NCBI RefSeq assembly: GCF_001194135.2
Contig: NC_068987.1
Span: 13,913,109-13,977,108 of the forward strand
DNA: 64,000 nucleotides
DNA from: Octopus bimaculoides
Taxonomy: Eukaryota
Direction: 5' to 3'
Below the pieces are notes generated by a model. It saw only the letters and a program-made list of their open reading frames with translations, was not told where the DNA came from and searched no databases. The position numbers were made by a program, and so were the translations under genes. The first letter of the stretch is position 1. Each line of letters starts with the position of its first letter. Below are positions 4,274 to 64,000 of the stretch, piece by piece.

Positions 4274-7200
4274 AAAATTGAGTCATTGCCAAAGTAGCTT
4301 GTTGAATAATTCATTGAAATAAAGAAAAAGGTGTCCTGCTTGATAATAATAATAATTATTATTATTCACTTAACTTCTGAGTTATCTTTGTCATATCTCA
4401 GCTTCATCCTGCAGCTTAGAAATGCAACACTTTTCTCAACACATGAGTTGTTCCAAGTATTGTTGCCAGCTGAAGTTTGGTGTCCATGGCTTTTGATGCC
4501 AGAATATTGCTCTCTTTCAGATGGTCCCAAGTGCACTGATCGCAATAGGGACCACACTCACTTTTGAGGCTCTATGGATTCATTCCATTTCCAATGCTAG
4601 GTCTTGGTACTTCTCAACTTTCTTGTCCTCTGCCTTTATTATTATTATTATTATTACTATCATCATCATTATTATTATTAAGGTGGCCAGACAAAATGTT
4701 ACTAAACATTTTGTCTGTCTTTATGTGCTAAGGTTATCTTCACCCATCATCATTTTGTGGTCTATAAAGTAAGTACCAGTCAGGTATTGGAGTCAATGGA
4801 ATTGACTTCACAGCCATCAAAAACTGCTGGCTTTGTGCCGGAATTTGAAATCATTATTATCATCATTATTATTGTAGGGCAGTGAGCTGGCAGAATTGTT
4901 AGCACACTGGGCAAAATGTTTAATGGCATTTCGTCTGTCTTCAGATTTTGAGTTCAAATTCCACCAAGGTTGACTTTGCCTTTCATCTTTTCAGGGTTAA
5001 TAAAGTAAGTACCAGTTACGAACTGGGGTCAATGTAATCTTCTAACCCCCTCCCAGCAAATTTTTGGCCTTGTGCCTATAGTAGAAAGGATTATCATTAT
5101 TATTATTAAGGCAGCGAGCTGGCAGAATTGTTAGCGCGCTGGACGAAATGCTTAGCAGTATTTTGCCTGTCGGTACATTCTGAGTTCAAATTCTGCCGCG
5201 GTCAACTTTGCCTTCCATCCTTTCGGGGTCAATTAAATAAGTACCAGTTACACACTGGAGTTGGTGTAATCGACTTAATCCCCCTCCCCGAAGCTGCCCT
5301 TGTGGCAAAAATTTGAAATCATTACTATTATTATCAATATTTTTCCACCAAAGTCAGCATTACCTTTCATCTTTCCGGGGTTGATAAAAGAAGTACCAGT
5401 CAAGTACCGAGGGTGATGTAATCAACTTACTCCCCCCTCTCAAAAACTGTTGGCCCTGTACCAAAATTTTAAACCATTATTATTATTATTATTTGGTATT
5501 AATTATTTTAAATCAATGTTATTGAAATAGTGTACTTAAGAGTTCGATTTGAACGAGATTTCAGGAATGTATTTCATGATATGTCAACAATACGTTTTAT
5601 AGAATTTTTTTTTTTTTTTTTTTTTTAATAATTTATTTTTCCCGTTCAATACTTTTGGTTTGTTGATTGATGCATGGGTTCTTTCTTTTAATTTTTCTGA
5701 AAGCTTAATGTTTTATTCCCATTTTAAGCCAGTGTTTTTCTCTTTCTGCACTTAGGGATGCTCAAAATTTTGTCAATCAAAACAAAAAATCAATATGATT
5801 GTTCTTATTTGTTGTCATGAAAAGAAATAACAACAAAAATGTATTATTGTATTTTGTCTTTTTAGTGTTCTTAAATCTACTTATTTTCTTTACAATATTT
5901 ATTTGTAATCTTCAATTATAATTTTCAATTATTTTTACAAATCCTTTTTATTTTCATATGACAGAAGTTTCTCACAAATCTCCTCTTGCATTTTCAAGTT
6001 TTGCTTGTATTTGACTTCAGTTTGTCTTCTTGAAGGTCATCACTGACACATACACACACACATATTATATGTTTTTGCTGATTTTTGGTGTACTGATGTA
6101 AGTTGCTGTCTTCCTTAGTTTCAAAACTATGCTCGTCAAAGCGATTATAATCAGTCGATCCATTGAGAATATATTTACTTTGAGGATTTAGAAATTCCCA
6201 CTGGAATATACCACAAAGGTTATCTCTGACAACAATTGAATTCAGAAACATTAGAGTATGCATTAAAATTTGAAATATCACAGTTATGAACCATCTACTG
6301 TTAATAGCTTGATATGGGGTAATGCTAATAGTTATTAGCTATTCTTAACAGTTTTATGTCTATTTTATACTCTTGAAGAAAATGTCAAGCTGGCAGAAAT
6401 ATTGGAATCTCAGACAAAATGCTTAGTGGCATTCCTTCTGGCTCTTTATGTTCTCAGTTCAAATCCTCATGAGATCAACTTTGCCTTTCATCCCTTAGTC
6501 AAGTAATTGATTGCCCCTCCTCTCAATATTATTGGCCTTGAAAAGGCAGTGAGCTGACATTATCATTAGCACATCAGACAAAATGTTTAGTGGCATTTTG
6601 TCCATCTCTACATTCTGAGGTCGACTTTGCCTTTCATCCTTTCAGGATCAATAAGTACCAGTTGATCACTGGGGTCAATGTAATCAACTTACTCCCTTCT
6701 CCAAAATTGCTGGCCTTGTAACAAAATCTAAAACCAGATTTTGTATCCTGTTCAGGGTGAATGTTGTGAATCAGTCACTTTATAAGCCATGAAAACTGGG
6801 TAACTGGTCCTAGAGCTCAAGATAAAAAATTATTTTAAATAATAATAAAATGCTCTACAAATCAGAGGTTAGCCTGAGCTGTGGAATTTTTTCAATGAGT
6901 TCATGAAAGATCATGTATCATAAATGTTAGCTGACAATTTAGAAAAAAATTCATGCTATGTGGCTGTGGTAGGGTCTTATTCGATTAGCTGTCTGATTAT
7001 TTGAAACCTGTCTTGAGTTGAACTTAGAACATGTTATTCTGGTCTCTTTCACTGCAAAATAATGTTATTGTAATAATGTAACTAGCATTCTTCATTTATT
7101 AATCAGAATTAAGTTTTCCTTTTGAACTATATTCCTTCGTTGTATATCTATAGCAGTTGTCTTGATAAATCATGTGCATGGTGAACAATGGTATCAGTAA

Positions 7201-8675
7201 TTAATTTGCTCACTGAAGTTACTAGAGCCACAAGCTCTTGTTAGATTTATTAGTCCAGAGTGTCTTTGGCTGATAAGACACAATAATGTCAAAACACTGG
7301 ATGTCCCAGAGTCCCTTTATATTAAAGAATCGAGTGTATTATGAACACACAATCATTTGAAAGTTGTTGTTCTCCTATCATGAAACACAACAAAGATTAG
7401 CATATTCCTGCTTGAATCTGCAGGTATGTATTAGGAATGAATATGCAAATCATCTATTGATGGTGAACTGGCAGAATTATTAGCATGCTGAGCAAAATGC
7501 TTAGTGGTATTTTGTCCATCTTTACTTTCTGAATTCAAATTCTGGTGAGGTCAACTTTGCTTTCATCCTTTCGGGTTTGATAAAATAAGTACCAGTTGAG
7601 CACTGGGGTGAATGTAATCAACTTAATGGCTCTTGGGTATGAATATAAACTACATCCCTCTGTCAAGCAGTGTTAAGCCAGTGTGGTAGAGGAGGCTCAT
7701 CGAACCAGTAAGATCTCAAGCCATTACTTGGAAGGGGGAACATGCTGAGGCCTTCATCCTGCAGTGAACTGAACATAGGTAATACAGTTCAATCCAAAAT
7801 ACGCAAGTCATTTAGTCTTAATATTCTTGAGTAAAGTGTCTCTTGTTTGTATTGGTTGTAATAATTACCCATGTTGATTCTTCCTCTGCCTCACAAGATC
7901 TTAGATTCCTTCTGGTTGACTGCTAGTTTATGAGGTTCTATAGTGTTTTGGTCAAAAAACATTGATGAAAAGAACACCTATGTGATGCTTCTGTCATAGG
8001 GAATTTAAAACATTTAAAATTTCAACTATTCAAAGTAGTTTTCCTTTGTTTTTCTTTTTGTTTTTTTTCTAAACTGACAGCCATTTTTTTCAAGGCTAGC
8101 AAGTTTTGTGTGTGTGTGTTTCAATTTGAAAACTTGTGCATTGGTTTAGCAGTTTATTTAAAGTTTAGTTACCCATCACCTCAAACGACTTGAATAATTG
8201 GTACCTGTTTGTTAGCCAGACAAAACTTCAGTTTCGCAATAGTCATATGTCTTGTTAAAAAGCACAAAGCAAAAAGCTTTATCTTAGTTTGAACAGATGT
8301 AGTTAGTACAGCACTTTAACACTATAGTCTTTATATCTCCTTAATTCCTTAATTTTTCCTCAGATGTCTCTTCTAAAATTTTTAATAAAGTATTGCATGT
8401 GTATTTCTCTGAGGTATATTATTTTTAGTTGTTCTAATAAGTTTGTTTCATGAATAATTGAAATTTTTGCTAGTTTTTGTGTTCTTTATAATTTTTCTCA
8501 CTTGTGTCTGTGTGCGTGTATGTGGGTATGTATTTTACCCCCTATTCTATAAATTTGTATTTTTATGCAATTAATATATAATTGTTTAAACAACTGGTTG
8601 TATATCTTATTTATATTTAGTCTTTATTGCATAAAATTAATAATATTCTTTTTCAGCTAAAAAAGATTATTATTA

Positions 8676-13369: not shown

Positions 13370-13400
<31 letters not shown>

Positions 13401-13407
13401 GTATATA

Positions 13408-13457
<50 letters not shown>

Positions 13458-13694
13458 TATAGTACTGGTCAAATAGTCAGACTGATATAACTGTCTGTTC
13501 CCGTCCCCTGAATTTCTATCCTTGTTCCTATTTTAGAAATTACTATTGTTATTGCTGTTTGTAGAGAAGTGGTTGCTTTCCATTGGTCTTAAGAAGCTAT
13601 GTGCTTGTTGCCTTATGTCTCTTGTCTAGTAATCAACAGTTGTACCACAATTGTTATCTTGGAAGATATACCTCTGTGTATGTTTGTATGTACG

Positions 13695-13742
<48 letters not shown>

Positions 13743-16700
13743 CATGCACGCAAGCATTAAAATTAAATACACTTATATGCGTAGTAATCTCATTGCAAAT
13801 TGGTTTATTTTTCTTCTTATTGCTTTTGAGTTTGGTTGTTATTTTTTTATTATTATTATTATTTTCTTCTCGTGTCGTCATTGTATAAAGTGAAACTGGA
13901 TACTGGGTGTCAGAGCAGCAGTGGGCATGGCGGTTATGTTAATGGCGGTTATGTTAATGGCGGAGCTTGTGATAGCAATTAAAACAAAAACAACTGTGAT
14001 TCCATGCTATAACTATGGCAGTTATGAGAGTAGTTACTTATCTAGAACATGAATTCATTTAAAATTGATAAGATTTTATTCCTCTCTGTCTGTTTCTCTC
14101 TCTTCCTCTTTCTCACACACACACACATACAATCCATTGACAGATTATAAACCTCAGCTGTACATCAAATGTTTCATGTATCTATGGTAGATACTCTTCC
14201 ATATATTTCTCAAAATGTTAGTTAACACTTAGTAATAAATATTCTTCATGATATATTATTTAGAAAGATTTGAATCTCATTTCATATAGATGCAGGTAAC
14301 CAACCAAATGGCCACAGAGAGAAAATTAGTCTCCTTTCCTGTAAAGAAGTTTTATTAGTTTACATCTGATAATATATCTTTTATGTTGCTAATCTAAATC
14401 AGCAGATTTGCAATATTTTTATCTATTTTTTTAAATAAATATTTTTCTTTTTCTTTTTCCTTTAGCTTTAGCTTTTATATTTGCTCATGTTTATCTTAAG
14501 ATGAGTGTTCCTAATTATATTCAAACACAGATTTCTTCATATAAAAATATGTACATGAATAAAATGCTTGGTCACGTACACATGTAAGTGACCAGCATTT
14601 GGTACTGTGCAAAAGCTAGTATAGGGATCACATGTGCACTCTGTGTGTGTGTGTGTGTGTGTGTAGCTTAGCAAAATGTTTAAGAAGTTCACTTCAAAAT
14701 CTTGTACCTGCTTTAATCCCTGACATCTTGAGTGTGAGTCTTTTACCTATAATCTTTATGTTTACATTGTACAAGAGTAGAAATAATTGGGAAACAGAGT
14801 CAATACCTTTACATTTTGAGCTGAAAAATCTTGCTAGGATAATTTTGGCATTTCATGCTCCTGGGATCATTAAAATAGATACCAATAGGATTCTAATCAG
14901 GCAAGTGTCTTCTGCCATTGTGTTATGTCAGTCATAGCTCGCCAACAAAATTTGCTAAATGGAAACTGTATAGAAGCCCATGAGAGGGATCATACTTGTT
15001 CTTGGGTGATAGATTTAACCCATTTAGCATTCAGATTACTCTGTCAAATGTAATGCTTATTCATATTGTTTTGAATTTATGTATTATCTCATAGTTATGT
15101 GATTTTGATGATCTGATTGTTTATTTTTAGAATGGCATTGTAGGGTAGGTGTGAGAGACCAAATGTGGCCAGTTTGAAAATAAAACAGATACAATATTTG
15201 GGCTTGATATGGTCAGTTTAAATACTAAAGTGTTAAGCTGTCATCCACCTCCTGGCCCTTGAAAGTGTTTTAGTAAAGTCCATTGTATTTGAAGAAATTG
15301 AGCCATATCTCTGGTTTTAGAATAACTTCTGGTTTTCCTCTCACTAGTCTTGGAGTCCGTAAAAAGGTCATAGGTACTGTCTTTTCTCCTCTGATTAATC
15401 CATTTACCAGTGATTGGCAGCTATATGCTGGTTCTTGGTAATGAGATTGTGTAGAAAAACATGAATGGCATGATATGTGAAGAGGGGGTGATAGGAAGGA
15501 GACAGGATAATGGAAGTTAGGAAAAGTGATGCATATTAACAATTAGTGAAGGTGTAATGTGTGTGTGTGTGTGTGTGAGAGAGAGAAATGAGGGATATCA
15601 ATGAAGATGATAAGAGAGTGGAGAGAGAAAGAGTGTGATGGCTAGTAGCATGGTAGAGAATATGCTGGACATTGAATATGAACAGTGCACAAGCGTTCAT
15701 ATTAGAGATGAGAGATAGAAATATAAAGGCTGATAATGAAGAAAATAGTGTGAGATTGAATACAAGTAGATTCGGCATCATCCCTTGCTACACAGATGGT
15801 ACACCCCCTAAAAAGTGAATTGTGCTGATGTGATGTAGCATCATATAAGCCTGGTAGTTATTCTCTTGGTTGCTTTTGCTGAACCACTAAGTTACAGGGA
15901 CGTAAGCACACCAACACCTGTTCTCAAGCGGTGGTTGGGGACAAACACTGACACACACACACACACACACACATATGTATATATGATGGGCTTCTTTCAG
16001 TTCCCATCTACCAAATCCACTCACAAGTCTTTGGTTGGCTCCAGGTTATAGTACAAAACACTTGCCCAAGGAGCCATGCAGTGGGACTGAACCTGGAACC
16101 ATGTGGTTTGAAAGCAGTCTTCTTACCATACAGCCACGCCTAGTCCTAGAGATTGTATTATACAGTAATAAACTACTACACCAATGGGCTAATGCTCTCA
16201 TCTTCTATATAGAATGATCATACACACATGCTCTCTCTTATATGTGTGTGTGTGTGTGTATGAGTGCATGTGCGGTAGTACATTTTCTTTTTATATTTCA
16301 TCATTTTAGCTTTATTTTTCAAACATGAACTGCAGTTCCTGTAATTACTCAAATGTCATTTTAGAGAGAAAAAAAACAAAAAACATTTCGTCAATTGATA
16401 GTAACTAAGCGATTATTGGGTAAAATGAAAATATTTCATACTTTGTTATTTCCACAGATAAAAACAAAAATTAAATTAAAATGAAGAAAAATTATTGATG
16501 ATGATGACGATGATGATATTAATAATAATAAGTTTTTCCTGTTCAACTTGAATAGTTTCAGTGGTTAGGCTTAACCTTCTGTCTTCCGGAACCGTCCACC
16601 CTCCAATGCATTTGCCAATTGCTGATAATGTTACCAAGTTTTTTGCTGTTAGTCTTACAATACATTCCAATACATATATATATATATAAACATACACATA

Positions 16701-18385: not shown

Positions 18386-21300
18386 AGGTGGCAAGTTGGC
18401 AGAATTGTTAGCATGCCAAACAAAATGTTGTGTGGCATTCCTTCCAGCTTTACATTTTGAGTTCAAATTCTGCTGAGGTCAACTTTGCCTTTCATCATTT
18501 TTCATGTTGATAAAATAAGTACCAGTTGAGCTCTGAGGTTGATGTAATCGACTAACTCCCTTCCACAAAATCTCAGGCCTTGTACCTATAGTCAAAAAGA
18601 TCATCATTGTTATTAAGAGTGGTTGACTGGCAGAATCAGCAGTATCAGACTTGTTATGATATTAATATAAAGCCCTTTACATTCCCAGTAGAAATCTTAA
18701 AAATATCAACTGCTTTTAATTGTTCTGGGTAAAGGCCACACACTGTAAAGTGGTTGGCATTAGGAAGGGCATCCAGCTGTAGAAACCAATTCAAATCAGA
18801 CTGGAACCTGGTGCCGCTCTCCAGCTTTTGAGCTCTGGTCAAACTGTCCAGCCCATGCCAACATGGAAAATGGATGTTACCGGATGATAATGACGATGAT
18901 GATGAGTCAGTAATATGAAGTTCCATTTGAGTACTGCTATTTATCTCTTTGCAGTGCCACGTGATCATTCTCTCCCCATCTTCTGAATATGGGTATCTGT
19001 ATAGCTTCTCTACAACATGAAACCTGCTCTTCTCCCTTCTCTCATACTTTTAACCCCTCATCCTCGTTTAATGTCCACGTTTCATGCTAGGAGAGGTTAG
19101 ATGGTTTGATAGGATACAACGAATCCAAGGACTGCATTGTGCTCCCTTACCTTTCTTGGCATGCTTTCTGTGGCTCGATGCCCTTCCTAATGCCAACCCT
19201 CTCACAGTATCTACTGGACATGGTTTTTCTTTGTGCCGCTAGCACTAGTGAGGTTACCAGACCCTCAGAATATGATGAGCAGGGGCAGACATCACAAATG
19301 CATTCTATCAAATTCTGTAATGACTCTGTCACTTTTCCAAAAAGAAAAATTGTCAATTAATAACAAGGCTGTTAATTATTGATTAATGATATAATATTCT
19401 AGTAGTGGTTTTCTTTGGTTTGTTTTGTTTTTATGTTAATGTATTTTTGCTTCTGTGTAAATGTAAAATAACGGGATATTGTTTTTTATGTTTTTGCTAT
19501 ACCTTAGGAGGCTCATTATGTCAATAATAGAAAATAGGAAAAATTGGAAAACAAAGTTTTTTTTATGGTTAACATTTTGATTTGGTGTTTATTTTAAATA
19601 TTAAAAATGTCTAAGATGAATCATAGTCCAGAACAGGTTTTAAAGCACTCACACTCGATATATTTAATGTCATATAAGTGACGTCCATCATTTCCAATCT
19701 TCTATGAAAACATGTTTGCTCATGGGGAAATATTTACCTTACTTAAAAAACAGGTAATGGTTGGTGACAGAAAGGGCATCCAGCTGTAGAAAACCTGCTT
19801 CAGCTAATTCCATTTGATCCATGCAAGCATGGAAAGGGGACATTAAAATGATGATGAGATAGTTAAGCCAATGAGGAAGTCTCCAAAGTGGTTGCTTAGT
19901 CTGCTAGAAATAGCAGTCAGATTTCACTACCATTTAACAATAAAAGAAAAGGACACATTTGATGAGCCAGATACATTTTATCTGAGAAAAAAGACAGACA
20001 GGTCACAGCTGAAGTATTTTTGGTCATTGGTTTTCTCAATCAGGGATGATGTGAGCTTAAACAACAATAATGTCTTGAATGTTTCAATATTTCAGTTAAT
20101 TATTTTAAGGACGTCTGAAATCATTTTCAGTGAAGCTTCCTCACAGTTTTCACTTTGTAAACTAGAATGGATAGCAACACATCCAAAATGTTATCTTGCA
20201 ATAAAAATGCTCAGAAATTGAGAAGGATCTCTTCCCATCTCTTTCTCTTTGTACTTATTAAATCATACAAGTGGTGTGCCCTGGTGACCAGTTATTGTAA
20301 GGGAGGCAATTATTCCTAGATAAATCAAAGCAGGATTAGAAGTTTGAATTCTAAATCAAGAAACCTGGAAGAAGATGCATTGCTCTATGATTTTTCCTTT
20401 TTGGTAACTCACGAGAAAGATCATAAAATTTTAAAATTGTAGGTGTAACACTTTGCTTTTTCTTTTCTTTCTTCCCATTTCTTTCTTTTTGTTGTTGTTT
20501 GTATTGTGTCTGCTAGATTATAATTCTGGGCCTGTAATGAAAGCAGTTGATTACAGTGTTTCTGGAGCATGGCAGAAAATAAATTAATAACTGCTAATTA
20601 AATGTGTGTTTGTATCATTTGTATTGACATCACAGACTAATTGTAAATGAGCATCACCCTCCTACAAGCAGTGTCATTCGTTTGCAATCTTACATGGAAA
20701 CATGTCTGGCTGTTATGCTGTTCATGTGTGAAGGATTAAGGTAAATGTTACCTTACTTGAAAGCATGTGAGGGTTGGTGACATGGAAGGCATCTGGCCAT
20801 AAAAAACCTTCTACAAATCTCATCTGACTCATGTAAGCATGAAGAAGTGGACATGAAAATGATGATTGTAGTAATTATATCATGCGGTATATGACATAAT
20901 CTATTATAACATGTATGTAATCATAGTTATTGATCAAATTTTTTCATGAACAAAACTTACAATAGACTAGTATATTATCTAGTCTAGAGTTGAGCTGCCA
21001 TAAAGCTCACCACATCATAATACTTTCTCATAACTACAGTAAATGGAAAATAAAGTGTCCGCACTAAATGATGATGATTTACTTCTTTGTTATTGCTACA
21101 TTATTATTATTATTATTTTTATTGTTTTTGTTATAGGAGTATCCATTTTTCACCATGAAAACCTTTCCTCCTGCATTCATTGTTCACTTAGGAGGTGTTG
21201 TGTCAGCAAAATCTGTTAAATTGCTGGATAAAATTCATAATCCTGGTAAGTTTCAAATGGTTTTGGGCTAGTTCATTATTTTTAATCTCTAAATATAATT

Positions 21301-23169
21301 TGGCATCCGAGATAAAATGAACATATACATACACACACACATGTATATTTTATTTTGCTTTTGCTAAATGTCTAAAACTGAAAATGATTCATTAGTACAA
21401 TGGATTCTAGGACAGCCAATGTTTTGATTGACATTGTTGTATTTCACCTACCAGAGGCATCCCAGACTGATGAAACCAACAAGAGTTCAAAGCTCTTGTT
21501 TATAACTTCTGCAAACAAACGGTTTCCTGATTCAACCACTAATAAATCCTCTTTTGCATGGTGAACAGCAAGAATGGAAACAATGACTTGCATTTTTATT
21601 TTTGATAAATTCCGGCACGTTCGAGTGTGAATACGCTAATTGCCATTGTGTTCATAATGCTAATGGATCGAGTATGTTTCAATCGTACATTTGTTACAAA
21701 GTACTCGTTCTCTTATGATAAAACACAACAGTGATTAGCATATTCACAGTTGAATTTGCCAGAGCATATTAAGAGTAAATATGCAAATCATTATTTTGAT
21801 TCTTACACATGACAATTTATTACCAATTAGCAGTTATCAGCATGAATCAGCAAATAATTTGCTTGCTGAAATCATAAACAAGAGCCACAAATTCTTGTTA
21901 AATTCATTAGTCCAGGATGCCTTTAGCTGACGAGACACCACAATGTTGAAACACTGAGTGTCTCAAAGTCCACTTCTGCTAATGAATCAAATATGTTATG
22001 AACACATTCGTTATAAAGAAGTTGTTCTCCTGTGATGAAACAGCAGTGATTAGTATATTAACATTTGAATCTGTTGGATTATATTAAGAATGAATATGAA
22101 AGTCATTATTTTAGTTCTTGCTCTTCACTGAACAGGTGATGATCTTTTAAGAATTATCTATTATAATGTTATTGTCTGCTAAGAACTCAGGTATTTCATC
22201 AATTGTCTATTGAACTAAGCAATGTGCTTACTTCGACTTGGAGCATGTATACCAAAGCTTCAGTTCATCTTTGATGTTTAGCAAGCTTCTTAATGCAGCT
22301 ATGTCTGTGACTATATAGTAATTTATGTAACAATAAATATTAGGTTAACAGTACAAAGTGTTCTTCTGCATGTTTTATTTTATTTTCCTATTTTCTTTTT
22401 TTTTCCACCCACTTTCAGATGAACCTGAGACGAGAGATGCTTGGTGGATTGAAATCCGTACTGAGATCCGTTCTCATTGTCGTTCAATGGGATGTCATGC
22501 TGTGATAGGTTACAGTGAAATGTCTTCCATATGGTGAGCTTCTTATAATCTGCATGTCTCTGCATTCTTTATCTTTGTCATATGCTCTCACTCTCCATAT
22601 TTCCTCCCCTATATATATATAAATAATAATAAATGGAGCAAAACACATATAAATAAAAGTTCCTTTAATTCCTACACATGTTTCAAAATATATGAGAGAG
22701 CTCTTCTACAAAGAAGTAAGAACTGCTGGAATACCTCATATATTCCTCTTCAGGGAATCCATAAATAAACATATAAAAGCAAGACAAATACGAAATGATG
22801 AGGTAACTTACGAGCTAAGATGTTACATCATAAATTATATATATATATTTGTAAATAGTGATTACTCCAAACATTTACCAGTTTGTTCTCGGTTAGGTAT
22901 ATATATAAAAAGAATTAAAGGTAATGCTATGCCACTTCATAATAATCCTTGTTATAGTTCTATATTTAAGAGATGAAGAATCATGTACATTATTTACATT
23001 TGACGGATATTTGTCTTCATCTTGTTTGTTGTTAACACAACGTTTCGGCTGATATACCCTCCAGCCTTCATCAGGTGTCTTGGGGAAATTTCGAACCCGG
23101 GCGTATGGTGTAGTGGTTAAGAGCACAGGCTGCTAACCCCAAGATTCCGAGTTCGATTCCAGGCAGTGA

Positions 23170-23216
<47 letters not shown>

Positions 23217-25216
23217 TCAAAATATACCTTAGGAATGAGAACCCAGGTTCGAAATGTCCCCCAAGACACCGGATGAAGGCTGGAGAGTATATCAGCCGAA
23301 ATGTTGTGTTAACAACAAACAAGATGAGGACGAATATCCGTCAAATGTAAATAATGTTCTGTACTCAGATTTAATTTTGTATTATAAAATTGAGACTAAC
23401 TTTGCATTGTTGGTGTATACCTATGCATACCAAGTTTCATATTTTGGAGAAAACTGTTTTAATTGATTTTACTACTCCATTCTTCAATTGACATTTTCTT
23501 ATTTCCTTTTTATCTGTATGTGTGTGTGTGCATGTGTATGTATGTATATATACAGGCACACACACACATGCACATGTTTTATATATATCTGTGTGTGTGT
23601 GTAAAATAACTTTTTACAGAAATTGTTTTCATCTTTTTTTGTTTGGTTTTTGAATTCATTAGGATTCCTTTCTTCAAGTGACAAATTATTTTATTTATTT
23701 TTAATTCATTCAGTTTTTTTGGCTTTTTTTTTTTTACATGACACAAGTTCCTTTACTTTTCCATTAAAAAAAAATTTTTTTTCTTTTATTTATCACTTTC
23801 ATTTTATTTTTCCTTCTCCTCCTTCTTTTCGTTTCAGTGATGAAGTAATTATTCTGTCAGCTATTGGCACAGCTGCTGTCATCAGCAGCAACATGGATGT
23901 ACTGCTGCCTGTTGTCGCACAGAAAGAAACTGCTCCACTCTATCAGTCCACTGATAAGGTACCAGTGGAGAAGGAGAAGCTTTATGTTGACGTGAACTTG
24001 GCAAATCAAATGTCACAGAATAGGTAAGGCTTCCTCACTCCCACACACACGCACATTACAACTTATTTATCTATTTTTGCTAATTACTCTATCATTTGTG
24101 CCAAGCTACCTACGTTAGAGTGGTGTATAGTAATAATAATAATAATGATGATTGCATTTATTTGCCACAAGGGTGAAGGATGAGGGGGCAATACAAAGAC
24201 AGACATAAAGTGTGGGAGTTTACATATAATGAAATGATTATAAAAAAAAGGGAAAGAGAAAGAAATTAAGTGGACATGGTATACACTGAAAAAGAAGGGA
24301 CATATGTATAGCATACAATGGTTTAAAAAAATGGTTGGGTAGGATGATAGAAATGCCTCTTTGGATAATCGAGGAACCCCACTGTCTGAGATTTCCCAGC
24401 TAATTTCTAAAGCATAAACAGTGCTGTATTTTATCAGAAATATGGCCATGAAAGGGTTAAAGAAGTCACTGATTTCATAAGAACAATTCCTTATTTATTT
24501 TTGTTTATTTATTTTTTTTCTTTACTTTCCAGTATTGAAGAGGGTTACACACCTGCAAACTGTGTACTTTGTCACATTCCCTACAAAACTGCCTCTATGC
24601 CATTTAAGGTAACACTGGATACCTGCACTGTATGTCAGTAAGTATATTGTTTCTGTATGTTTTAAGATAGCAGTGAACTGTGTGTGTGTGTGTGCATGCG
24701 TTATACATGTCTTTGTCATCATCATCGTCAGCACCTGCTTTTCCATGCTTGCAGGGATCAGACACAATCTGTTGAAGCAGTTTTTTTTTTTTTATGGCCA
24801 AATTCCTTCTTGATACCAGCTCTTACAGACAAGAGTATACATATATAACCAAGTATCTCCTTTACAGCAGCACACCTGTTTCTATCCCCTTTCTTGTTAA
24901 CTTTCTCTTTCCTTCTCTCTCTCTCTCCCTCTGGGTATCCATGTACTTCCCCTGTAGCAAGATACCTCTCTCTCTCTGTCACACTCTAACCTTTCATCAT
25001 CTGATACAAGATCACCTCACACAAAGATTCCTTGTCTTGCAAGTTACTTGGTGATGTTGCAGGTACTGATGCTGGTGTTAGGAAGGGCATCCACCCGTAA
25101 AAAACCATGCCAAAATAGACACAGAAGTATGGTGCAATATTCTACCTGGCCAGCTCCTGTCAAACCATCCAACCCATGCCAGCATTGAAGACGGACAGTA
25201 AATGATGATAATGATA

Positions 25217-25247: not shown

Positions 25248-26957
25248 GATGGGCTTCTTTCAGTTTCCCTCTACCCGGTCTTCTCACTAGGCTTTGGTCA
25301 GCCAGGGGCACTTGCCCAAGGTGCTGTGCAGTGGTACTGAATCCTATTGCACATGGATAGGAAGCAAGCTTCTAAACCACATAACCATACAGTGATATAA
25401 ATATAAATTGCCAATTCTTCAAATTGTAGATCAGCATCTTCCTAATTTATCCTGTAAGTTAACCCTCAAGAGAACTAAAATCGGATTTTCAAAACTCAAA
25501 TTGAAAATGAAAATGAAGAGATGTTAAAAACCGTCAAGGGTGATGACGATGATGATAACAATGATGACAGCATCATCATCATCATCATCAACAACCATTA
25601 CTTTCTTTTTATCCCAGATCCTCTCGACGCAGGTGGCTAGCTTAGTGGGCTCCCACTCTTGACACGTATCAAGGCCCCTCTCCAAAAGAACGTGGGCAGC
25701 ACACATGCTTTTTATTAAGTCAAAATTGTCTGCACTTTTATAACTCTTTTTTCCTTTCTCATGATGTTGGACAAGTTTAACCCTTTAGTGTTCACATTAT
25801 TCTGCCATAATTAATGCTTTTTTATCCACATTGTTTTGAACTAATCAAGCATTATCTCGTAGCTATGAGATTTTGATGAGGTAGCTGTTAATTTTTAAAA
25901 TGATATTGTAGGGCTGGTGTGAGAGACCAGATCTGGCCAGTTTGAACATAGAATAGACAGAATACTTTTGGCTGGATATGGCCGGTTTAAATGCTAAAGG
26001 GTTAAAACATTTAAAACATTAGTTATATTTACATCATTAGAGAGAGAGACAAATTAGATTGTTTTTTTGTTTTTTTTGGCTGGAACCTGAAATGGATAAA
26101 TCTATAAATAATAGTATGTAAATATTTGGAGAGAAAAAGTCGATGGCTGCCCATGGGACACAAACTCATATTTTCTATAAACATGACAAACATTCTGGAA
26201 AACTTTTGACTTCTTCCATCCAAAGATTTTTTTTCTTTTAATCTATTACTTACACACTATTATCTTCAGCTTTATTTACTTTGAGCTTCTCTTTCAAAAA
26301 CAATTAATTTTATTAAAATGATACATTCCCTATTTTTTTAATTCTCACATGCACCACCCACTTTTCAAATTCTACAAAATTAAGTCTAAAATGATTGGGT
26401 GGTTTTTAAGTTTAAGATAATTCATCATTATTATACATTCATCTTTCATTCTGGCATGGGTTGAGTGATTTGACAGGACTTGGCAAGCCAAGGGACTGTC
26501 CCAAGCTGCACTGCTTGTTTTGGCATGGTTTTTTATAGTTGGATGCCTTTCCTAATGTCAACCATTTTGCAGAGTATTCTGGGTACTTTTTAAGTAGCAC
26601 CAGATAAATGAAATTAAATTGTTACAGTTTGATGGTTGGCAGTGGGGAAAAAGGCAGTTCCAAAAAATTGTATTTGGTTCAAATTATTTTCTCAAAAAAA
26701 TACACTTCATCTCCATTATTAATTTCTTGCTCGTTTGTTTGTTTTGCAGTAAACATCCAGTTCCAGATGTGCTTTTTACTACAATCAACCCGCCTGAAGA
26801 AATACAGACAATAGGAAAAGGAACTCTTATACAAGCTCGGTAAGGATCTTATAGAGGAATGCGATGATTGGACATGATCGTTTGGACGCTGACAATTTGG
26901 CACAGTTGACTGGACATACAACATGTTTTAGTGACAGTATATTTGGTGCTGGAGGTA

Positions 26958-27007
<50 letters not shown>

Positions 27008-28411
27008 CAAATACAGAAATATACACATGCAGATAGAAAGAGAGACACACATTACACATGCAAACATCACTAGCTTCCTGAAACATCTGCTTTTCCACGT
27101 TTGTGTGGCGAGATGGCTTTCCTTTTGCCAACCCTGTTTCTAAGTAAGGTAATATTTCCCCATTACCAAACATTGTTCTCGCAGATGATTGGAAATGAAG
27201 GACACTGCTTGTATGATGGTGACACTCACAACTACCATGTGATGTCAAAGTAAGGAGACAGTGACATACATATGTACACACACACAAACACACACACACA
27301 CACACACACATATACATAAAAATTTATATTTGCATAATTATAAATTTTAAGGTGGTGAGCTGGCAGAAACGTTAGCACGCCGGGCGAAATGCTTAACGGT
27401 ATTTCGTCTGCTGTTACGTTCTGCGTTAAAATTCCACCGCAGTCGACTCTGCCTTTCATCCTTTTGGGGTCGATAAATTAAGTACCAGTTACGCACTGGG
27501 GTCGATGTAATCGACTTAATACCTTTGTCTGTCATTGTTTGTCCCCTCTGTGTTTAGCCCCATGTGGGCAATAAATAAATAAATAATTATAAATGTTATC
27601 AAGATTTCTGCTCATAATTTATCTTGGTCTATTGCAGGATATATCGTGCGAAAAAGGAAGGCAAAGGAGAAGCTTGTGCTAAAGAAATTAGTGATGTAAG
27701 CATTTCCTATTTGTTATTATTGTTGTTGCTTCAACGATATTTAGCATGGGCATCTGATTATAGAAAATTTGCCTCAACAAATTACCTCTGACCCATGCAA
27801 GCATGGAAAATCATCATCAATTAACATCTGTTCTTCATGCTGACATGGGTTGGACAGTTTAACAGGAACTGGCTAGCTGGAGAGCTCCCTAGGCTCCATT
27901 TTGTCTGTTTTGATTTGGTTTCTATGGCTGGATGCCCTTCCTAATGCCAGCCATTTTACAGAGTGTACTGGGTGCTGTGAACATGACACTGGTACAGATG
28001 CTGATGTTGATATATATATATATATAATATATAATTTAGATATGCTATAAAATTTATAACTGCTATAAAATTCATCTATGCTATAATTTTAATATACTAT
28101 AAAATTTATAATTCATATATATAACTTAGTAACAAATATTCAAGTTACATTAGATGTTATATTTAAAATGTGAAAACTATAAAACATAGAACAGTTTTGA
28201 TATGCTTCAAATCTTTCCTCTTCTTTGAGATCATCTAACTTGAATCTTTTATTCCATCTGTTGATAGTGTTTACCATTTATGGAATATGAACTTCATAAT
28301 CAACTTATAAATAAATTAAAGGTGAGTTAAAAGTTTCCCTTTTTTTTTTTTTGCCTGTGTAATTACTACTACTACTACTACTACTACTATTATTATTATT
28401 ATTATTATTAT

Positions 28412-28455: not shown

Positions 28456-29357
28456 AGGCAGTGAGCTGGCAGAATTGTTACTGTGCAGGGTAAAATGTTG
28501 AGTGGCATTTCTGAGTTCAAATTTCACCAAATTCAACTTTGCCTTTCTTCCTTTCAGGGTTGATAAAATAAGTACCAGTTGTATACTGGGGTCAATGTAA
28601 TTGACTTACGCCTCCCCAGAAATTTCAGGCACTGTACCCCTATTGTAGAAAGGATTATTAGGGTGGCAAGCTGGCAGAATTGTTAGCACTCTGAGAAAAA
28701 TGCTTAGAGGTATTTCGTCCACCTTTACATTCTGAACTCAAATTCCATGTACTAATGGAGCGCAGGGGTTGATGTAATTGGCTAGCCCCCTCTCCCAAAT
28801 TCCAGTCCTTGTGCCTATAGTAGAAAGAATTATTATTATTATTAAGGCAGCGAGCTGGCAGAAACATTAACATGCCGTGTGGAATGCTTAACAGTATTTC
28901 ATTCATCTCCACATTCTGAGTTCAAATTCTGCCGAGGTCGACTTTGCCTTTCATACTTTCAGGGTTGATAAATTAAACACCAGTTGAGTATTAGGGTCGA
29001 TGTAATTGACTAGTCCTCTCCTCAAAAAACTTCAGACCTTGTGCCTATAGTAGAAAGGATCATTATTATTATTATTTCTCTTCTTATCCTTTTTGTCCCT
29101 CTATTTATCAAGATACTACTGATAAATTCTTTGCGCTATAAATTGCAATTTCATCCAAGTATTATTTTTTAATTTTTGTTTGAGGAATTCCACAAAGGAG
29201 ATCCCATTCATGTTTTCTACATGTGTATATCTATTATGAATTTAATATATTTTTAATATTAATATTTATATTCGTAATGTATTTCCTAGTCTGTAATGAA
29301 ACACATGCAGCATGGAATTAAAAATATACCAAACTTTTCACTTTTGTAATACATACA

Positions 29358-29423
<66 letters not shown>

Positions 29424-34852: not shown

Positions 34853-34893
<41 letters not shown>

Positions 34894-45967: not shown

Positions 45968-46009
<42 letters not shown>

Positions 46010-59267: not shown

Positions 59268-59299
<32 letters not shown>

Positions 59300-60040: not shown

Positions 60041-61224
60041 TTCTGTGTGTGTGTTTATATCTCTTTGTCTTGATATCACAAGATAGTTGTAAGCAAGTGT
60101 CACTGTCAAGCAAGCAGTGTTATTTATTTTCAGTCTTCCATGAAAATGTGCCCAGCCAAGGGGAGGTATTAGCTTGTTTGGAAATAGGTGAGACTTGGTA
60201 ACAGGAAGGGCATCCAGCTGCAGAAAAATCTGCCCTAAGGAATACTGATTGACCCATGCAGGCATTGAAAAGTGGATGTTAAGATGGTGGTAGTGGTGGT
60301 GGATATTGGCTTGTATAAAATACAATTTTTAAAAGGCAACTTTCCTTGAGGAGCCCCAGAATTTTTGCACAGAATGTAGAGAAAATTTGGTTTTGTGGTT
60401 AAGAAATAAAGGGTCTTTGATTAAATCCAATTTCATATTATGCAGCAATAAGATATTTGATGGCCATCAGAGAGTGAACCTTTTAAATCATGTTGATATA
60501 TAAACATCCTCGCATAAGGCTTTGGTTGACCTGGGGCTATAATAGAACATACTTGCCCATGCGACACCTTGGACAAGAGTCTTCTACTATAGCCCTGGAC
60601 CAACCAAAGCCTTGTGAAGGGATTTGATAGATGGAAACTGAAAGAAGCCTATATGTGTGTGTCTTCTTGTTTTGACTTCACATGATAGATGTAAAATGAT
60701 TACCACTGTGTTATTCATTTCCAATATCCTGTGATATCCATGGGGGAAATATTTACTTTGTTGGAAACAGATAAGGGTTGGTGACAGGAAGAGCATTTGG
60801 CCTTAGGAAAATCTGCCTCAATAAGTTCATTCTGATCCATACAAGCATTGAAAAGTAGATGATAAGGATGATTTGTATATCTACATTCTTGCATTAAGGT
60901 TAATAGTCAGGAGATATTGTAATATCATTTTGAATAGTTAATATTCAGGATAAATTTCAGAGTTCTAAAAAACTTTGGGCAGTCAGCTTTGATAACAATA
61001 AATCAAAAGAAAAGTTTGTTGAATATCAAATAAGTTTTGCACAGCTACTAAATTTATTCAACTTGCTTTTCTTTAACAATTAGGTGTATGTTTGTATGCT
61101 AACCATAAAATACACTATTCATTGTTAAAACATTCCCTGCAGATTCAAATGTAAATCTGTTTGCTGGTAGTTTTTGTCCAGAGAACACTATCTCCCTTTA
61201 CATGGAGTATGTTCATAATACACA

Positions 61225-62125
61225 TTTCACTGGTTCATGCTCTAGTTTGATTCATTGGTCTAGTGAGAGAACTTTCACTGAGCCACACAACATAGTTAAA
61301 CCACTGCTGTGTCTCAATGTTCTCTTACACTGGTGAATCACTTGTTTTGAACAAACATAGCCTAAAGGGAGGTGTTCTCCATTGACTGGAAACAATGGTC
61401 AGATATTCACATTTGAATCTTCTAGAATATATTAAGAATGAGCAGTGTAGATTATTTTTTAGATTCTCGCTGGTTTGTGTGCACCCCATAAATTATTACT
61501 GGCTGACATCAGCACATATCTGCCAATAATTTTATTTGTTGATTCCTATAAACAAGAACTTGTGCTCTTGTTAGATTCATTCGTCCAACTGTGAAGTAGC
61601 TTTGACTGAGGAGACACACCACAGTGTCAGGAAGTCCCCTTTCACCTGTGAACTGGTGAATCAATTTATGAACACACATTGTCAATAGAGACAAAGCTTT
61701 CTCTGGTAGTGAAAAACAAGTGATCAGACAGCCCTGTTTGAATCTGCCAGAACATATTAAGAATGAATAAATACATTATTGTTTAGTTTCTCACTGTTCT
61801 GCATGCACTCAATGAATTATTATCATTCTGGCTAGCATCGACACAGCAGCAGCAAATAATTTGTTTGCTGATTCCAGTAAACAAGAGCTCATGCTCTTGT
61901 TAAATTCATTGGTCCAGACGGGTAGCTTTGACCAAAGAGACGTGCAATGAGATCAAAATACTATAATGTCTTCAAATCCCCTTGTACTGGTGAATTGTGT
62001 GTTATTTTGAACACAATACATTGTCTGAAGATTGGAGGTATCCTACATTGACATAAAACATCAGTGATTAAATATTTATGTTCAAATCTGCCAGAACACA
62101 TTAAGAATGAATAGATATCTTGTTG
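61225..62125 (+). repeat. Tandem array of about three ~327-bp monomers, each with a decayed hammerhead motif (retrozyme / satellite-2-like)
   Basis: HHR relics start at 61272, 61600 and 61926 (spacing 328, 326); anchor ATTAAGAATGA at 61431, 61756, 62100. Confidence 0.75.
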
Positions 62126-64000
62126 CTTAGATTTTGCATGCACCTATTGCTTACTCCAGCCCTGGAAAGATTTGAACTCAACACTGCAAGCTTTTATTTA
62201 AATTCCTGGGTTGTCTTTCCTGCCTTTCTTGCCAAGAATCAGTTTTTTTTTACCTCATTATTATAAGTGTAATTTTAATTAATTAAACTAAAAATTTCTT
62301 GGCTCACTTTATTGACATATTTAAAGGTGACAAACTGATAGAACTGTCAATGCATCAGACAAAATGCTTAGTGACGTTTTGTGTGGCTCTTCAAATTCTG
62401 AGCTGAAATTCCACCAAGGTCAACTTTGCTTATCCTTTTGGTGGTCAGTAAAATAAGTACTAGTCAAACATTGATTGGGGGGAGGGGGGTCAATGTACTC
62501 TCTCAAAATTGCTGGCATTGTGTCAAATTTAGAAAGAATATTACTATATCTAATGTAGCCAATACTAAAATACTTAAAAATATTTAAAAATATTAGGAAT
62601 AATTAAGTGATGAGAAAAAGACAAAATTAATCATTAACAACTAATACTATTTTAATTAGGCATCTTATTAGACATCTATGGCAAACAATAAACATCAACG
62701 TACTTGCCAAAGTAGAGATAAGAGAATTCCTATGTAGAAGCACAATGTGGTAGACTGTAGGAGCAGAGGCCCTCTGTCAGTTATGATGATGAGTGCTACA
62801 GTTGACATGAATAACAAAACAACCTGTTCATGAAATTAACATGCAACTAAATGAGCACTCAACAGTCACATGTACACTCTTAACGCTGTCTCAGGGAGAT
62901 TCAGTGTGACAAGGCTGGCCCTTTGAACTACAGGTACATCTCACTTTTGCCAACAGAGTGAACAGGAGCAATGAGAAATAAAGTGTTTTGCTCAAGAACA
63001 CAATGTGCTACTGGAAATCAAACTCACTATCTTACAATCATGAGCTGAATACTCTAACCAGCTAAACTACATGTCTTCTCAAGTAGGTGCAGAGATTTCG
63101 CATATTTTAAAGAATAGCCACAAAGGAGATAGGTATGGCAGCTGAAACTGGCTCAAGGTGGCTGGGGATGACAAGATTTCAGATAGAACCCTTCTGTTGG
63201 CGAGAACTAATTCAGTCTTTGCTGCCTCATTTAGGCAAAATGAACAGGCTAAGGGATGAAGTGTTTGTGAGCCTGAGATACTTGGTTAAGCATAGGGGTT
63301 TCTGATATTACGATGAATTCAGAAGAAGCACTTGTAATACCTCTGAGTAGCTCCTGCAGTTTCTGTGTGGAGCAAAGCATCTCTGATATTTATTTTGCTT
63401 GAGAGTAATGACTGTTGAATAAAGATTTATTGCTGTTGTTGAATGTTGATTGAGCAGACCAATAATCAAAGGCATATTAGCCATGATCATCCCATCTTTG
63501 TTTTCATTTTATTTTTTCCTTCTCTTCCTTGGACATTGTAATCAGTCACTGATGCTGAAAAGTGTCAGAAATGGTGCAGTGTTCAATTAGATTCTCAAAA
63601 GGATTTGGCTTTCCTTTGTTTCTGTCCTAGTTCAAACCCTGCCTTAGTCAACTTTGTCTTTTACCCCTCTCAGGGATCTATGAAATAGGTTACTAATCCT
63701 GAAATACATTTTATTTGATACACATCAACTGTATCTCACCCACTTCCAACTTTATAAAGGGGGAGGTCCTACAGTAGTCCTAGTGCATGCATACAGTGGA
63801 GTAGATAGGTGTATCTCATTGTGGACTTAGCCAGCAAGAGTTAAGTGACATGGTCATAGATAGAACACAAAGCTCATAACTTATGGACTATTGACCATTC
63901 AATTTGACTTGGACACCTGGAAATAAAAAATACAAATTTGTAAAGAAAAATGATTTATATGATGTGAAAGAAATAATAATGAGGTCTCTAGACTTTTGAA

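What the first reader, a model, noticed from the sequence alone, without database searches (positions are those of the whole stretch)
21915..21971. Intact hammerhead ribozyme inside a C2CD5 intron, in the sense orientation
Seen: every conserved HHR core position is present in type I order. Helix I is CUUUAG/UCAAAG (one G-U, one A-C mismatch) extended by GGA/UCC across a UGC bulge. The core is CUGACGA. Helix II is GACA/UGUU with a CCACAA hexaloop, followed by GAAA, helix III ACAC/GUGU and a GUC triplet (cleavage after 21962). Established: a GGA-UG.. bulged helix I plus a hexaloop II is the layout of the Schistosoma Sm-alpha HHR, where the two elements make the activating tertiary contact; intronic HHRs are known in amniote genes. 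Also seen: helix III (ACACU-G-AGUGU) is self-complementary, so a dimeric fold is possible. Inference: this copy could self-cleave the C2CD5 pre-mRNA between the exons at 21137-21245 and 22419-22533, or is the least decayed member of a retrozyme family.
Basis: partly seen in the sequence, partly recalled or inferred. Interest (0 to 1): 0.9.

Follow-up and report, generated by a model that had tools for sequence, protein, structure and literature searches.

The report
Relic hammerhead ribozyme in an intronic repeat
The hammerhead ribozyme motif is really there, but it is the best-preserved copy of an old, decaying ~320-base repeat of a well-known ribozyme-carrying retroelement type that landed in a C2CD5 intron, and nothing suggests the gene uses it.

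Summary
The motif at 21915-21971 (+) is real. All hammerhead core positions sit in type I order, the three helices are as described, and cleavage is predicted after C21962. A strict descriptor finds only this site in the window and none in 300 shuffled windows. "Intact" overstates it, though. Rfam Hammerhead_1 gives 23.3 bits against a gathering score of 34. The base pair of helix II is a G·U wobble left by CpG decay, and helix I has an A·C mismatch next to the core. The hammerhead fold is about 13.6 kcal/mol worse than a competing 7-bp helix.

The motif belongs to a ~320-nt, AT-rich repeat present at three loci in the window, in short tandem arrays and in both orientations. The other five copies carry homologous but broken hammerheads. 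This is the anatomy of metazoan non-LTR retrozymes (Smα- or newt-satellite-like). Copy B has no second hammerhead in cis. An inverted copy just upstream is predicted to pair with the whole ribozyme. B's hammerhead is no better conserved than the rest of the unit, and survival of the core by chance is plausible (P about 0.1-0.3 per copy).

Verdict: an ordinary retroelement relic. Self-cleavage of C2CD5 pre-mRNA is unproven and unlikely.

The parts
21915..21971 (+). Type I hammerhead motif of repeat copy B. Helix I distal GGA/UCC (21915-17 / 21969-71); UGC bulge (21918-20); helix I CUUUAG/UCAAAG (21921-26 / 21963-68, with G·U and A·C next to the core); core CUGACGA (21927-33); helix II GACA/UGUU with CCACAA loop (21934-47, closing pair G·U); GAA (21948-50); helix III ACAC/GUGU with UGA loop (21951-61); C17 at 21962, predicted cleavage between 21962 and 21963.
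   Evidence: Sequence. Rfam Hammerhead_1 23.3 bits, below the gathering score of 34. Only descriptor hit in the window and 0/300 shuffles.
21659..21977 (+). Full ~319-nt repeat unit (copy B) that carries the hammerhead near its 3' end. It includes a conserved upstream hairpin AACAAGAG-N7-UUCUUGUU (21877-21899).
   Evidence: nhmmer with a profile of the window copies, 263 bits. Alignment. Unit fold z=-2.8.
21978..22150 (+). Second tandem unit (B2), truncated before its hammerhead, so copy B has no downstream partner ribozyme.
   Evidence: 89-nt direct repeat with spacing 315. nhmmer model positions 2-174. 77% identical to the matching part of B.
21385..21688 (-). Inverted copy of the same repeat, head to head with copy B. 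Its hammerhead homologue (about 21402-21463) is broken (UAGGUGA instead of CUGANGA; GUCAAUCAAAAC instead of GUCGAAAC). In the sense transcript it is the antisense partner of the copy B ribozyme.
   Evidence: Inverted repeat I2. blastn. nhmmer 214 bits. Sequence. Predicted pairing with 21915-21971.
7164..7538 (+). Another locus of the family (about 1.15 units). Its hammerhead homologue at about 7258-7314 has a perfect helix I but a dead core (CUGAUAA, and AAAA in place of GAAA).
   Evidence: No Hammerhead hit at E<=10.
61102..62140 (+). Tandem array of about 3.2 units (period 324-332 nt). The hammerhead homologues at about 61265-61322, 61594-61639 and 61920-61980 are all broken (core deletion; loss of about 14 nt covering the helix II 3' strand, GAAA and the helix III 5' strand; CCAAAGA core).
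   Evidence: No Hammerhead hit at E<=10.
21137..21245 (+). C2CD5 exon upstream of the intron that holds the element.
   Evidence: Open frame with AG/GT boundaries. Pfam PF23025 E=1e-24 for the two joined exons.
22419..22533 (+). C2CD5 exon downstream of the intron.

Best explanation
The motif is the hammerhead of one copy (B) of an old, AT-rich repeat of about 320 nt. The repeat carried one type I hammerhead per unit and inserted as short head-to-tail multimers. That is the anatomy of metazoan non-LTR retrozymes, the class that includes Schistosoma Smα and the newt/axolotl satellite-2 repeats.

Inferred from the literature, not shown here: in active elements of this kind, a multimeric transcript is cut by the hammerheads into monomers. 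Weak-helix-III hammerheads often do this as dimers of neighbouring ribozymes. A tRNA ligase circularises the monomers, and they are copied back into DNA, probably by Penelope-like element machinery.

Shown here: copy B landed in a C2CD5 intron in the sense orientation and has since decayed by roughly 12%. Its catalytic core survived by chance. It acquired a C-to-U change at the C11.1-G12 CpG, giving a G10.1·U11.1 wobble, and a G-to-A change that puts an A·C mismatch next to the core in helix I.

Inferred: in the pre-mRNA it most likely does not cleave, or cleaves very poorly. The hammerhead fold is strongly disfavoured, there is no second hammerhead in cis, and the upstream inverted copy can sequester it. 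It has no role for the host gene.
For: Family context:
- blastn and nhmmer find copies at 7164-7538(+), 21385-21688(-), 21659-22150(+) and 61102-62140(+), with periods of 315-332 nt.
- All six hammerhead-bearing units align over the ribozyme. The majority sequence restores G2.2 (helix I CUUUGG) and C11.1.
- At the 11.1-12 step B has TG, four copies have CA and one has TA. This is the signature of an ancestral CpG in a window whose CpG observed/expected ratio is 0.24.
- Pair 2.1-1.1 occurs as G-C, A-U and G·U among copies.
- The loci are 32-37% GC.
- Tandem units of 170-400 nt, low GC and one type I hammerhead per unit define non-LTR retrozymes (PMC7229834). In Xenopus, 44% of such copies overlap introns (bioRxiv 10.64898/2026.07.22.740005).

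Decay and neutrality:
- B is 77% identical to its adjacent unit B2.
- B's hammerhead segment matches the leave-one-out majority at 39/46 positions, against 171/210 for the rest of the unit (Fisher p=0.68).
- The chance that 11 strict core bases survive 10-18% decay is 0.11-0.31 per copy, and 1 of 6 copies kept them.

Poor folding:
- The hammerhead fold is +0.8 kcal/mol against an MFE of -12.8, built on the GAGACAC/GUGUCUC helix. All helix II and III pair probabilities are 0.0.
- The double-hammerhead dimer is -10.0 against a cofold MFE of -33.4.
- In a control built on the Rfam consensus, the hammerhead fold lies within 0.2 kcal/mol of the MFE.
- In the 621-nt intron context the motif pairs with 21402-21462, and forcing the hammerhead costs +36.5 kcal/mol.
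- The Rfam score is below gathering.
Against: - All catalytic core nucleotides are present, and the helices can be drawn.
- Nearest-neighbour energies ignore the loop-bulge tertiary contact and co-transcriptional folding.
- Natural hammerheads with a mismatch at the base of helix II (axolotl HHR_Amex2, a U·U mismatch) still cleave: 22% in one hour as monomers, and efficiently as dimers (PMC7229834). Residual activity therefore cannot be excluded by computation.
- The retrozyme assignment rests on anatomy only. No circular RNA, no target-site duplications and no Penelope-like reverse transcriptase were seen in the window.
- With six decayed copies the covariation test has no power.
- The source organism was not identified, so the genome-wide family could not be examined.
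Confidence: 0.78

Rival explanations
1. Functional intronic ribozyme. Copy B is catalytically active in vivo and cleaves the C2CD5 pre-mRNA intron, either incidentally or as a domesticated element, as proposed for the amniote RECK, CTCL and DTNB intronic hammerheads.
For: The core is complete, and the motif is in the sense orientation inside an intron. It has a helix I bulge and a hexaloop II layout that could support a tertiary contact. Domesticated intronic type I hammerheads similar to retroelement ones exist in amniotes (PMC6155905). A mismatch at the base of helix II is tolerated in axolotl hammerheads.
Against: The Rfam score is sub-threshold. There is a G·U at 10.1-11.1 and an A·C next to the core. 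The hammerhead fold lies 13.6 kcal/mol above the MFE, and 36.5 kcal/mol above it in the intron context. No partner hammerhead lies in cis. The hammerhead segment is no more conserved than the rest of the unit (p=0.68). The copy is one of many decaying insertions in both orientations. No orthologous comparison was possible.
Confidence: 0.05
2. The family is not a retrozyme in the strict sense. It could be fragments of Penelope-like element pseudo-LTRs, or a SINE/satellite of the Smα kind that merely carries a hammerhead. Its mode of spread would then differ, but the status of this copy as a relic would not.
For: Non-LTR retrozymes are reported to be closely related to the pLTRs of Penelope-like elements. 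No circular RNA evidence is available here. No target-site duplications were found. One locus has an inverted pair rather than a pure tandem.
Against: Canonical helix lengths (4-bp helix III, 6-bp helix I with a distal extension) match the hammerheads of retrozymes rather than the minimal, helix-III-less variants described for Penelope-like elements. No reverse-transcriptase ORF lies next to any copy. The head-to-tail arrays begin and end at arbitrary points of the unit (model coordinates), as expected for multimeric cDNA.
Confidence: 0.13
3. Chance resemblance: an AT-rich intron happens to contain CUGANGA...GAAA with flanking complementarity.
For: The Rfam score is below gathering. Scaling E=0.0058 for 1 kb to the whole window would give about 0.4. 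The fold z-score is only -1.07.
Against: The strict descriptor gives 0/300 shuffles. Five paralogous copies carry homologous remnants of the same motif, and their majority sequence is a better hammerhead than copy B.
Confidence: 0.02

Closest known systems
Metazoan non-LTR retrozymes (Cervera & de la Peña 2020, PMC7229834), including the newt/axolotl satellite-2 repeats (330-350 bp)
   Same: Unit of about 320 nt. Head-to-tail arrays from just over one unit to about three units. GC 32-37%. One type I hammerhead per unit. Helix III short and near-palindromic, so a dimeric double-hammerhead can be drawn. Frequent intronic location.
   Different: The copies here are old and decayed (63-84% identical to the majority). 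Only one keeps the core. No RNA data are available. Helix II (GACA/UGUU, ancestrally GAC.../...GUC) and loop II (CCACAA) differ in sequence from the GUCC-CAAAUA-GGAC type that dominates the Rfam model, which explains part of the low score. The species is unknown.
Schistosoma mansoni Smα hammerhead (SINE-like ~335-bp repeat; crystal structure by Martick & Scott 2006)
   Same: Type I topology. Six-base-pair helix I, then unpaired bases on the 5' strand, then a distal GGA(U)/(A)UCC helix, and a six-base loop on helix II. This comparison rests on my recollection of the Smα sequence. Both are carried by an AT-rich repeat of about 330 nt.
   Different: Different helix II, loop II and bulge sequences. 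The bulge here is 3 nt on one strand only. The tertiary-contact nucleotides could not be checked. Smα is a fast monomeric ribozyme, whereas this copy has a wobble and a mismatch flanking the core and a strong competing fold.
Amniote intronic hammerheads HH9/HH10 (RECK, CTCL/C10orf118, DTNB)
   Same: A type I hammerhead in the sense orientation inside an intron of a protein-coding gene, thought to derive from retroelement hammerheads (PMC6155905).
   Different: Those are single-copy, ultraconserved across species and not embedded in a recognisable repeat. This one is a member of a multi-copy decaying repeat with no sign of selective preservation, and it has no gathering-level match to any hammerhead family in Rfam.
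Minimal hammerheads in Penelope-like element pseudo-LTRs (PMC4209133)
   Same: Type I, tandem, retroelement-borne, and proposed to be evolutionarily linked to retrozymes.
   Different: Those hammerheads are described as minimal, lacking helix III and the loop contacts. This one has a 4-bp helix III and an extended helix I. No reverse-transcriptase ORF is nearby.

Membership tests
Hammerhead ribozyme, type I (Rfam RF00163) | Conserved core: C3 U4 G5 A6 N7 G8 A9, G12 A13 A14, A15.1-U16.1, non-G at position 17 | tested here: met
   CUGACGA at 21927-33, GAA at 21948-50, A21951-U21961, C21962.
Hammerhead ribozyme, type I (Rfam RF00163) | Three helices around the core, with helix I open (type I), and a stable G10.1-C11.1 closing pair on helix II | tested here: inconclusive
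   The helices can be drawn in type I order. However, 10.1-11.1 is G·U, 2.2-1.2 is A·C and 2.1-1.1 is G·U. The hammerhead fold is +0.8 kcal/mol against an MFE of -12.8.
Hammerhead ribozyme, type I (Rfam RF00163) | Covariance-model score at or above the curated gathering score (34 bits) | tested here: not met
   23.3 bits, E=0.0058 on 1 kb. No hit at gathering level on the window. Not listed in the whole-window E-value search.
Hammerhead ribozyme, type I (Rfam RF00163) | Site-specific Mg2+-dependent self-cleavage 3' of position 17 | not testable with these tools
   Needs in vitro transcription and a cleavage assay.
Hammerhead ribozyme, type I (Rfam RF00163) | Helices supported by covariation among homologues | tested here: inconclusive
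   In six decayed copies, 76.3% of cells are paired against 75.9% in shuffles. Slid registers give 26-40%. Only pair 2.1-1.1 shows G-C, A-U and G·U.
Metazoan non-LTR retrozyme | Head-to-tail tandem repeats with a unit of about 170-400 bp | tested here: met
   Periods of 315-332 nt. Arrays of 1.15, 1.5 and about 3.2 units.
Metazoan non-LTR retrozyme | One type I hammerhead per unit | tested here: met
   Every unit that spans the region has a homologous hammerhead segment. It is intact in the core only in copy B, and the majority sequence is hammerhead-like.
Metazoan non-LTR retrozyme | Low GC content (<45-50%) | tested here: met
   32-37% GC.
Metazoan non-LTR retrozyme | Target-site duplications flanking the arrays (when present) | tested here: inconclusive
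   Only 7-8-nt chance-level matches near the ill-defined array ends.
Metazoan non-LTR retrozyme | Expressed as self-paired linear and circular RNAs of unit length | not testable with these tools
   No RNA data. The units fold moderately better than shuffles (z=-2.8 and -1.46).
Metazoan non-LTR retrozyme | Coexistence with Penelope-like elements in the same genome | not testable with these tools
   No long ORF with reverse-transcriptase character in the 64-kb window. The genome is not available.
Domesticated amniote intronic hammerheads (HH9/HH10) | Single-copy and conserved at an orthologous intron position across species | tested here: not met
   Multi-copy repeat. No excess conservation of the hammerhead segment. 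Orthologous introns could not be retrieved: protein hits were anonymous fragments at 74% identity or less.

The most novel reading that the evidence does not exclude
Copy B retains enough activity, perhaps helped by the helix I bulge / loop II contact or by transient co-transcriptional folding, to cut the C2CD5 intron in vivo. That would make it a young example of a retrozyme hammerhead on its way to becoming a host intronic ribozyme. Alternatively, the head-to-head pair of copies acts as a ~300-bp intronic hairpin that feeds RNA editing or small-RNA pathways.
Probability: 0.05. Interest if true: 0.55.

Novelty: new member of a known kind. Interest (0 to 1): 0.2.

Why it matters
It matters little for ribozyme biology. 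Type I hammerheads inside ~300-nt tandem repeats are known in thousands to more than 100,000 copies per genome across animals, and many lie in introns.

The case is useful as a caution. An intact-looking core in one copy of a decaying repeat is expected by chance, here roughly 1 copy in 4 to 9. It should not be read as an intronic regulatory ribozyme without cross-species conservation or a cleavage assay.

If the source genome's family has not been catalogued, these copies add one more lineage-specific retrozyme-type family. Its helix II/loop II variant scores poorly with the current Rfam model.

Tried and rejected
1. Rfam at gathering level on the whole window gave no hammerhead and nothing else. 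The whole-window E-value search is dominated by microsatellite-driven false miRNA hits and does not list the hammerhead.

2. I searched for family members elsewhere. One metagenome scan with the conserved 22-mer TCTTGTTARATTCATTNGTCCA returned two contigs. Both are chance matches with no hammerhead downstream.

3. I tried to identify the organism or obtain orthologous introns through the C2CD5 exons. The protein search returned only anonymous fragments of 126 aa or less, at 74% identity or less. Three contig look-ups gave unnamed Logan/ENA records without the repeat. The species remains unknown.

4. The covariation test on the six window copies has no power.

5. The target-site duplication search found nothing convincing.

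6. tRNA scan for a SINE-type origin: none found.

7. A literature search for hammerhead plus C2CD5 returned only irrelevant hits about hammerhead sharks.

8. I rejected the idea that c61590's GACAC/GUGUC represents a longer ancestral helix II. It is better explained by a ~14-nt deletion that joins the helix II 5' strand to the helix III 3' strand.

Full report
**Observation**

The stretch 21915-21971 on the + strand reads GGA UGC CUUUAG | CUGACGA | GACA CCACAA UGUU | GAA | ACAC UGA GUGU | C | UCAAAG UCC.
- the seven-base core CUGACGA (21927-21933);
- GAA plus A15.1 (21948-21951);
- A15.1-U16.1 closing a 4-bp helix III with a 3-nt loop;
- C17 at 21962;
- a 6-position helix I with a G·U (2.1-1.1) and an A·C (2.2-1.2) next to the core;
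- a 3-nt bulge and a distal GGA/UCC helix.

Helix III plus its loop (ACACUGAGUGU) is self-complementary apart from the central G.

**Is it more than chance?**

A strict type I descriptor finds only 21921-21968 on either strand of the window and nothing in 300 dinucleotide-preserving shuffles. A looser descriptor gives 0.01 hits per shuffled window.

Rfam's Hammerhead_1 model aligns to 21921-21968 over its full length at 23.3 bits, E=0.0058 for a 1-kb search. This is below the curated gathering score of 34. Nothing is reported at gathering level, and the hit drops out of the whole-window E-value search. The motif is therefore real at the sequence level, but by the standard model it is a sub-threshold hammerhead.

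**Gene context**

Exons 21137-21245 and 22419-22533 have AG/GT boundaries and an open frame. Joined, they match Pfam PF23025, a YbjQ-like domain of C2 domain-containing protein 5, at E=1e-24. An ORF at 35659-36090 on the same strand carries the start of PF23028, the fifth YbjQ-like domain of C2CD5. The motif is thus in a C2CD5 intron, in the sense orientation, as claimed.

**What it sits in**

The motif is not an isolated feature. Self-comparison of the window shows that 21659-21977 is one unit of a ~320-nt repeat. An nhmmer profile of the copies finds the following loci:

| Locus | Strand | Extent |
|---|---|---|
| 7164-7538 | + | about 1.15 units |
| 21385-21688 | - | one unit, head to head with copy B |
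| 21659-22150 | + | copy B plus a truncated second unit, B2 |
| 61102-62140 | + | about 3.2 units, period 324-332 nt |

The loci are 32-37% GC. Six units span the ribozyme region and align across it. Only copy B keeps the core. The others are damaged as follows:

| Copy (approx. position of hammerhead homologue) | Damage |
|---|---|
| 7258-7314 | CUGAUAA core, and AAAA in place of GAAA |
| 21402-21463 (-) | UAGGUGA core, plus an insertion |
| 61265-61322 | deletion in the core |
| 61594-61639 | loss of about 14 nt covering the helix II 3' strand, GAAA and the helix III 5' strand |
| 61920-61980 | CCAAAGA core |

None of these five gives any Hammerhead hit even at E<=10 in short-range searches.

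The majority sequence is a better hammerhead than copy B. It has G at 2.2, which makes helix I CUUUGG/…CAAAG, and C at 11.1.

At the 11.1-12 step copy B has TG, four copies have CA and one has TA. That is what an ancestral CpG leaves behind, and the window's CpG observed/expected ratio is only 0.24. The G·U wobble in copy B is therefore a decay product.

The base pair 2.1-1.1 appears as G-C, A-U and G·U in different copies. This is the only hint of covariation. Overall the six-copy test has no power (76.3% of cells paired against 75.9% in shuffles), although the register is specific (26-40% when slid).

**Comparison with the literature**

Short head-to-tail repeats of 170-400 nt, with low GC and one type I hammerhead per unit, are the defining anatomy of metazoan non-LTR retrozymes. 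The classical newt and axolotl 330-350-bp satellite repeats are examples. Their hammerheads have a weak helix III and cleave efficiently only as dimers of neighbouring ribozymes. The released monomers are circularised by a tRNA ligase (PMC7229834).

A 2026 preprint links these elements to the pseudo-LTRs of Penelope-like elements. It reports that about 44% of Xenopus copies overlap introns (10.64898/2026.07.22.740005), so an intronic location is ordinary.

Domesticated intronic hammerheads do exist in amniotes (RECK, CTCL, DTNB). They are single-copy and conserved across species (PMC6155905).

**Is copy B preserved by selection?**

There is no sign of it. B and the adjacent unit B2 are 77% identical over their shared part. 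If they were identical at insertion, each has decayed by about 12%.

Against the leave-one-out majority, B's hammerhead segment matches at 39/46 positions and the rest of the unit at 171/210 (Fisher p=0.68).

With 10-18% decay, the chance that the 11 strictly required core bases all survive is 0.11-0.31 per copy. One of six copies did. Neutral survival is a sufficient explanation.

**Can it work where it is?**

Computation cannot settle activity, but every test points the same way:
- As an isolated 57-mer, the hammerhead secondary structure evaluates to +0.8 kcal/mol. The MFE is -12.8 and is built on a perfect 7-bp helix GAGACAC(21932-38)/GUGUCUC(21958-64), which consumes the helix II 5' strand and the helix III 3' strand. 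Helices II and III have pair probabilities of 0.0. The fold is not unusual for its composition (z=-1.07).
- Repairing both defects in silico (U11.1C and A2.2G) improves the hammerhead fold only to -7.2, against -14.9 for the competitor.
- The double-hammerhead dimer allowed by the palindromic helix III evaluates to -10.0, against a cofold MFE of -33.4.
- As a control, a hammerhead built from the Rfam consensus (loop bases arbitrary) has its hammerhead fold within 0.2 kcal/mol of the MFE.
- In cis there is no partner ribozyme. The downstream unit is truncated at about 22150, before its hammerhead, and the upstream unit is inverted.
- The inverted unit is transcribed first. In the MFE of the 621-nt stretch 21380-22000 (-219.8 kcal/mol) it pairs with nearly every base of 21915-21971, through 21402-21462. 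Enforcing the hammerhead costs +36.5 kcal/mol.

Three caveats apply. These energies ignore tertiary contacts and folding kinetics. An axolotl hammerhead with a U·U mismatch at the base of helix II is still active. The core itself is intact.

**Conclusion**

Of the two interpretations offered, 'the least decayed member of a retrozyme family' is right. 'Intact ribozyme that cleaves the C2CD5 pre-mRNA' is unsupported and, on the evidence available, unlikely.

The element is a relic of a known kind of mobile element, so the finding is ordinary. Steps shown here:
- the presence of the motif;
- its repeat-family membership;
- the decay pattern;
- the lack of excess conservation;
- the unfavourable predicted folding.

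Steps inferred from the literature:
- the retrozyme life cycle (cleavage, circularisation, retrotransposition);
- the involvement of Penelope-like elements.

Not determined:
- the species;
- the genome-wide family;
- any RNA-level behaviour.

**What did not work**

- The metagenome scan for further family members returned only two chance matches.
- Protein-based attempts to name the organism or fetch orthologous introns returned anonymous fragments.
- No target-site duplications were found.
- No tRNA-like sequences were found.

Noticed in passing
window 21385-21989: Two copies of the repeat lie head to head (minus-strand copy 21385-21688, plus-strand copy 21659-21989). The intron transcript is therefore predicted to form an imperfect hairpin with arms of about 300 nt (621-nt MFE -219.8 kcal/mol). 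This is a possible double-stranded RNA substrate, independent of the ribozyme question.
   Followed up: partly
window 22987-23357: A 99-nt inverted repeat with 95% complementary arms (22987-23085 / 23259-23357) flanks a perfect (AAT)14 microsatellite at 23174-23216, in the next C2CD5 intron. It looks like a foldback or MITE-like element. The inner ends carry GGGGAAATTTCGAACCCGGG / CCCAGGTTCGAAATGTCCCC.
   Followed up: no
window 26868-27415(-), 35210-35674(+), 59245-60201, 15935-16068(-): Another dispersed repeat. ORF fragments share a 'GEILPYLE/GEVLACLEI' peptide (ORFs 26928-27317(-), 35210-35674(+), 59845-60201(+)). Some lie at or next to weak sub-threshold SCARNA7 matches (17.8-26.7 bits against a gathering score of 65).
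   Followed up: no
whole window: The CpG observed/expected ratio is 0.24 at 35.3% GC, which points to a heavily CpG-methylated animal genome. The species could not be identified: the best C2CD5 fragment hits are only 74% identical.
   Followed up: partly
window 13359-13757, 23507-23602, 29349-29420, 34848-35409, 43964-44064, 45866-46001, 52039-52426: Compound (TG)n/(TA)n microsatellites produce many sub-threshold mir-297/mir-466/mir-1277-type Rfam matches, which are false positives. Several sit next to assembly gaps (N runs at 12661-13359, 35410-35419, 51724-52041, 52513-52874).
   Followed up: no
window 21877-21899 and the homologous positions in the other copies: A hairpin AACAAGAG(C)-N4-7-(G)CUCUUGUU just upstream of the hammerhead is kept in five of the six aligned copies, with variable loop sequences, and is only partly kept in the 61250 copy. 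A second palindrome (CAGCAAAUAAUUUGCUUGCUG, about 21849-21869) is also conserved. Both are probably structural elements of the repeat RNA.
   Followed up: partly
window 7539-7610: Immediately downstream of the 7164-7538 repeat locus is a sequence (…CTTTCATCCTTTCGGGTTTGATAAAATAAGTACCAGTTGAGCACTGGGG…) that looks like the start of a different interspersed element.
   Followed up: no
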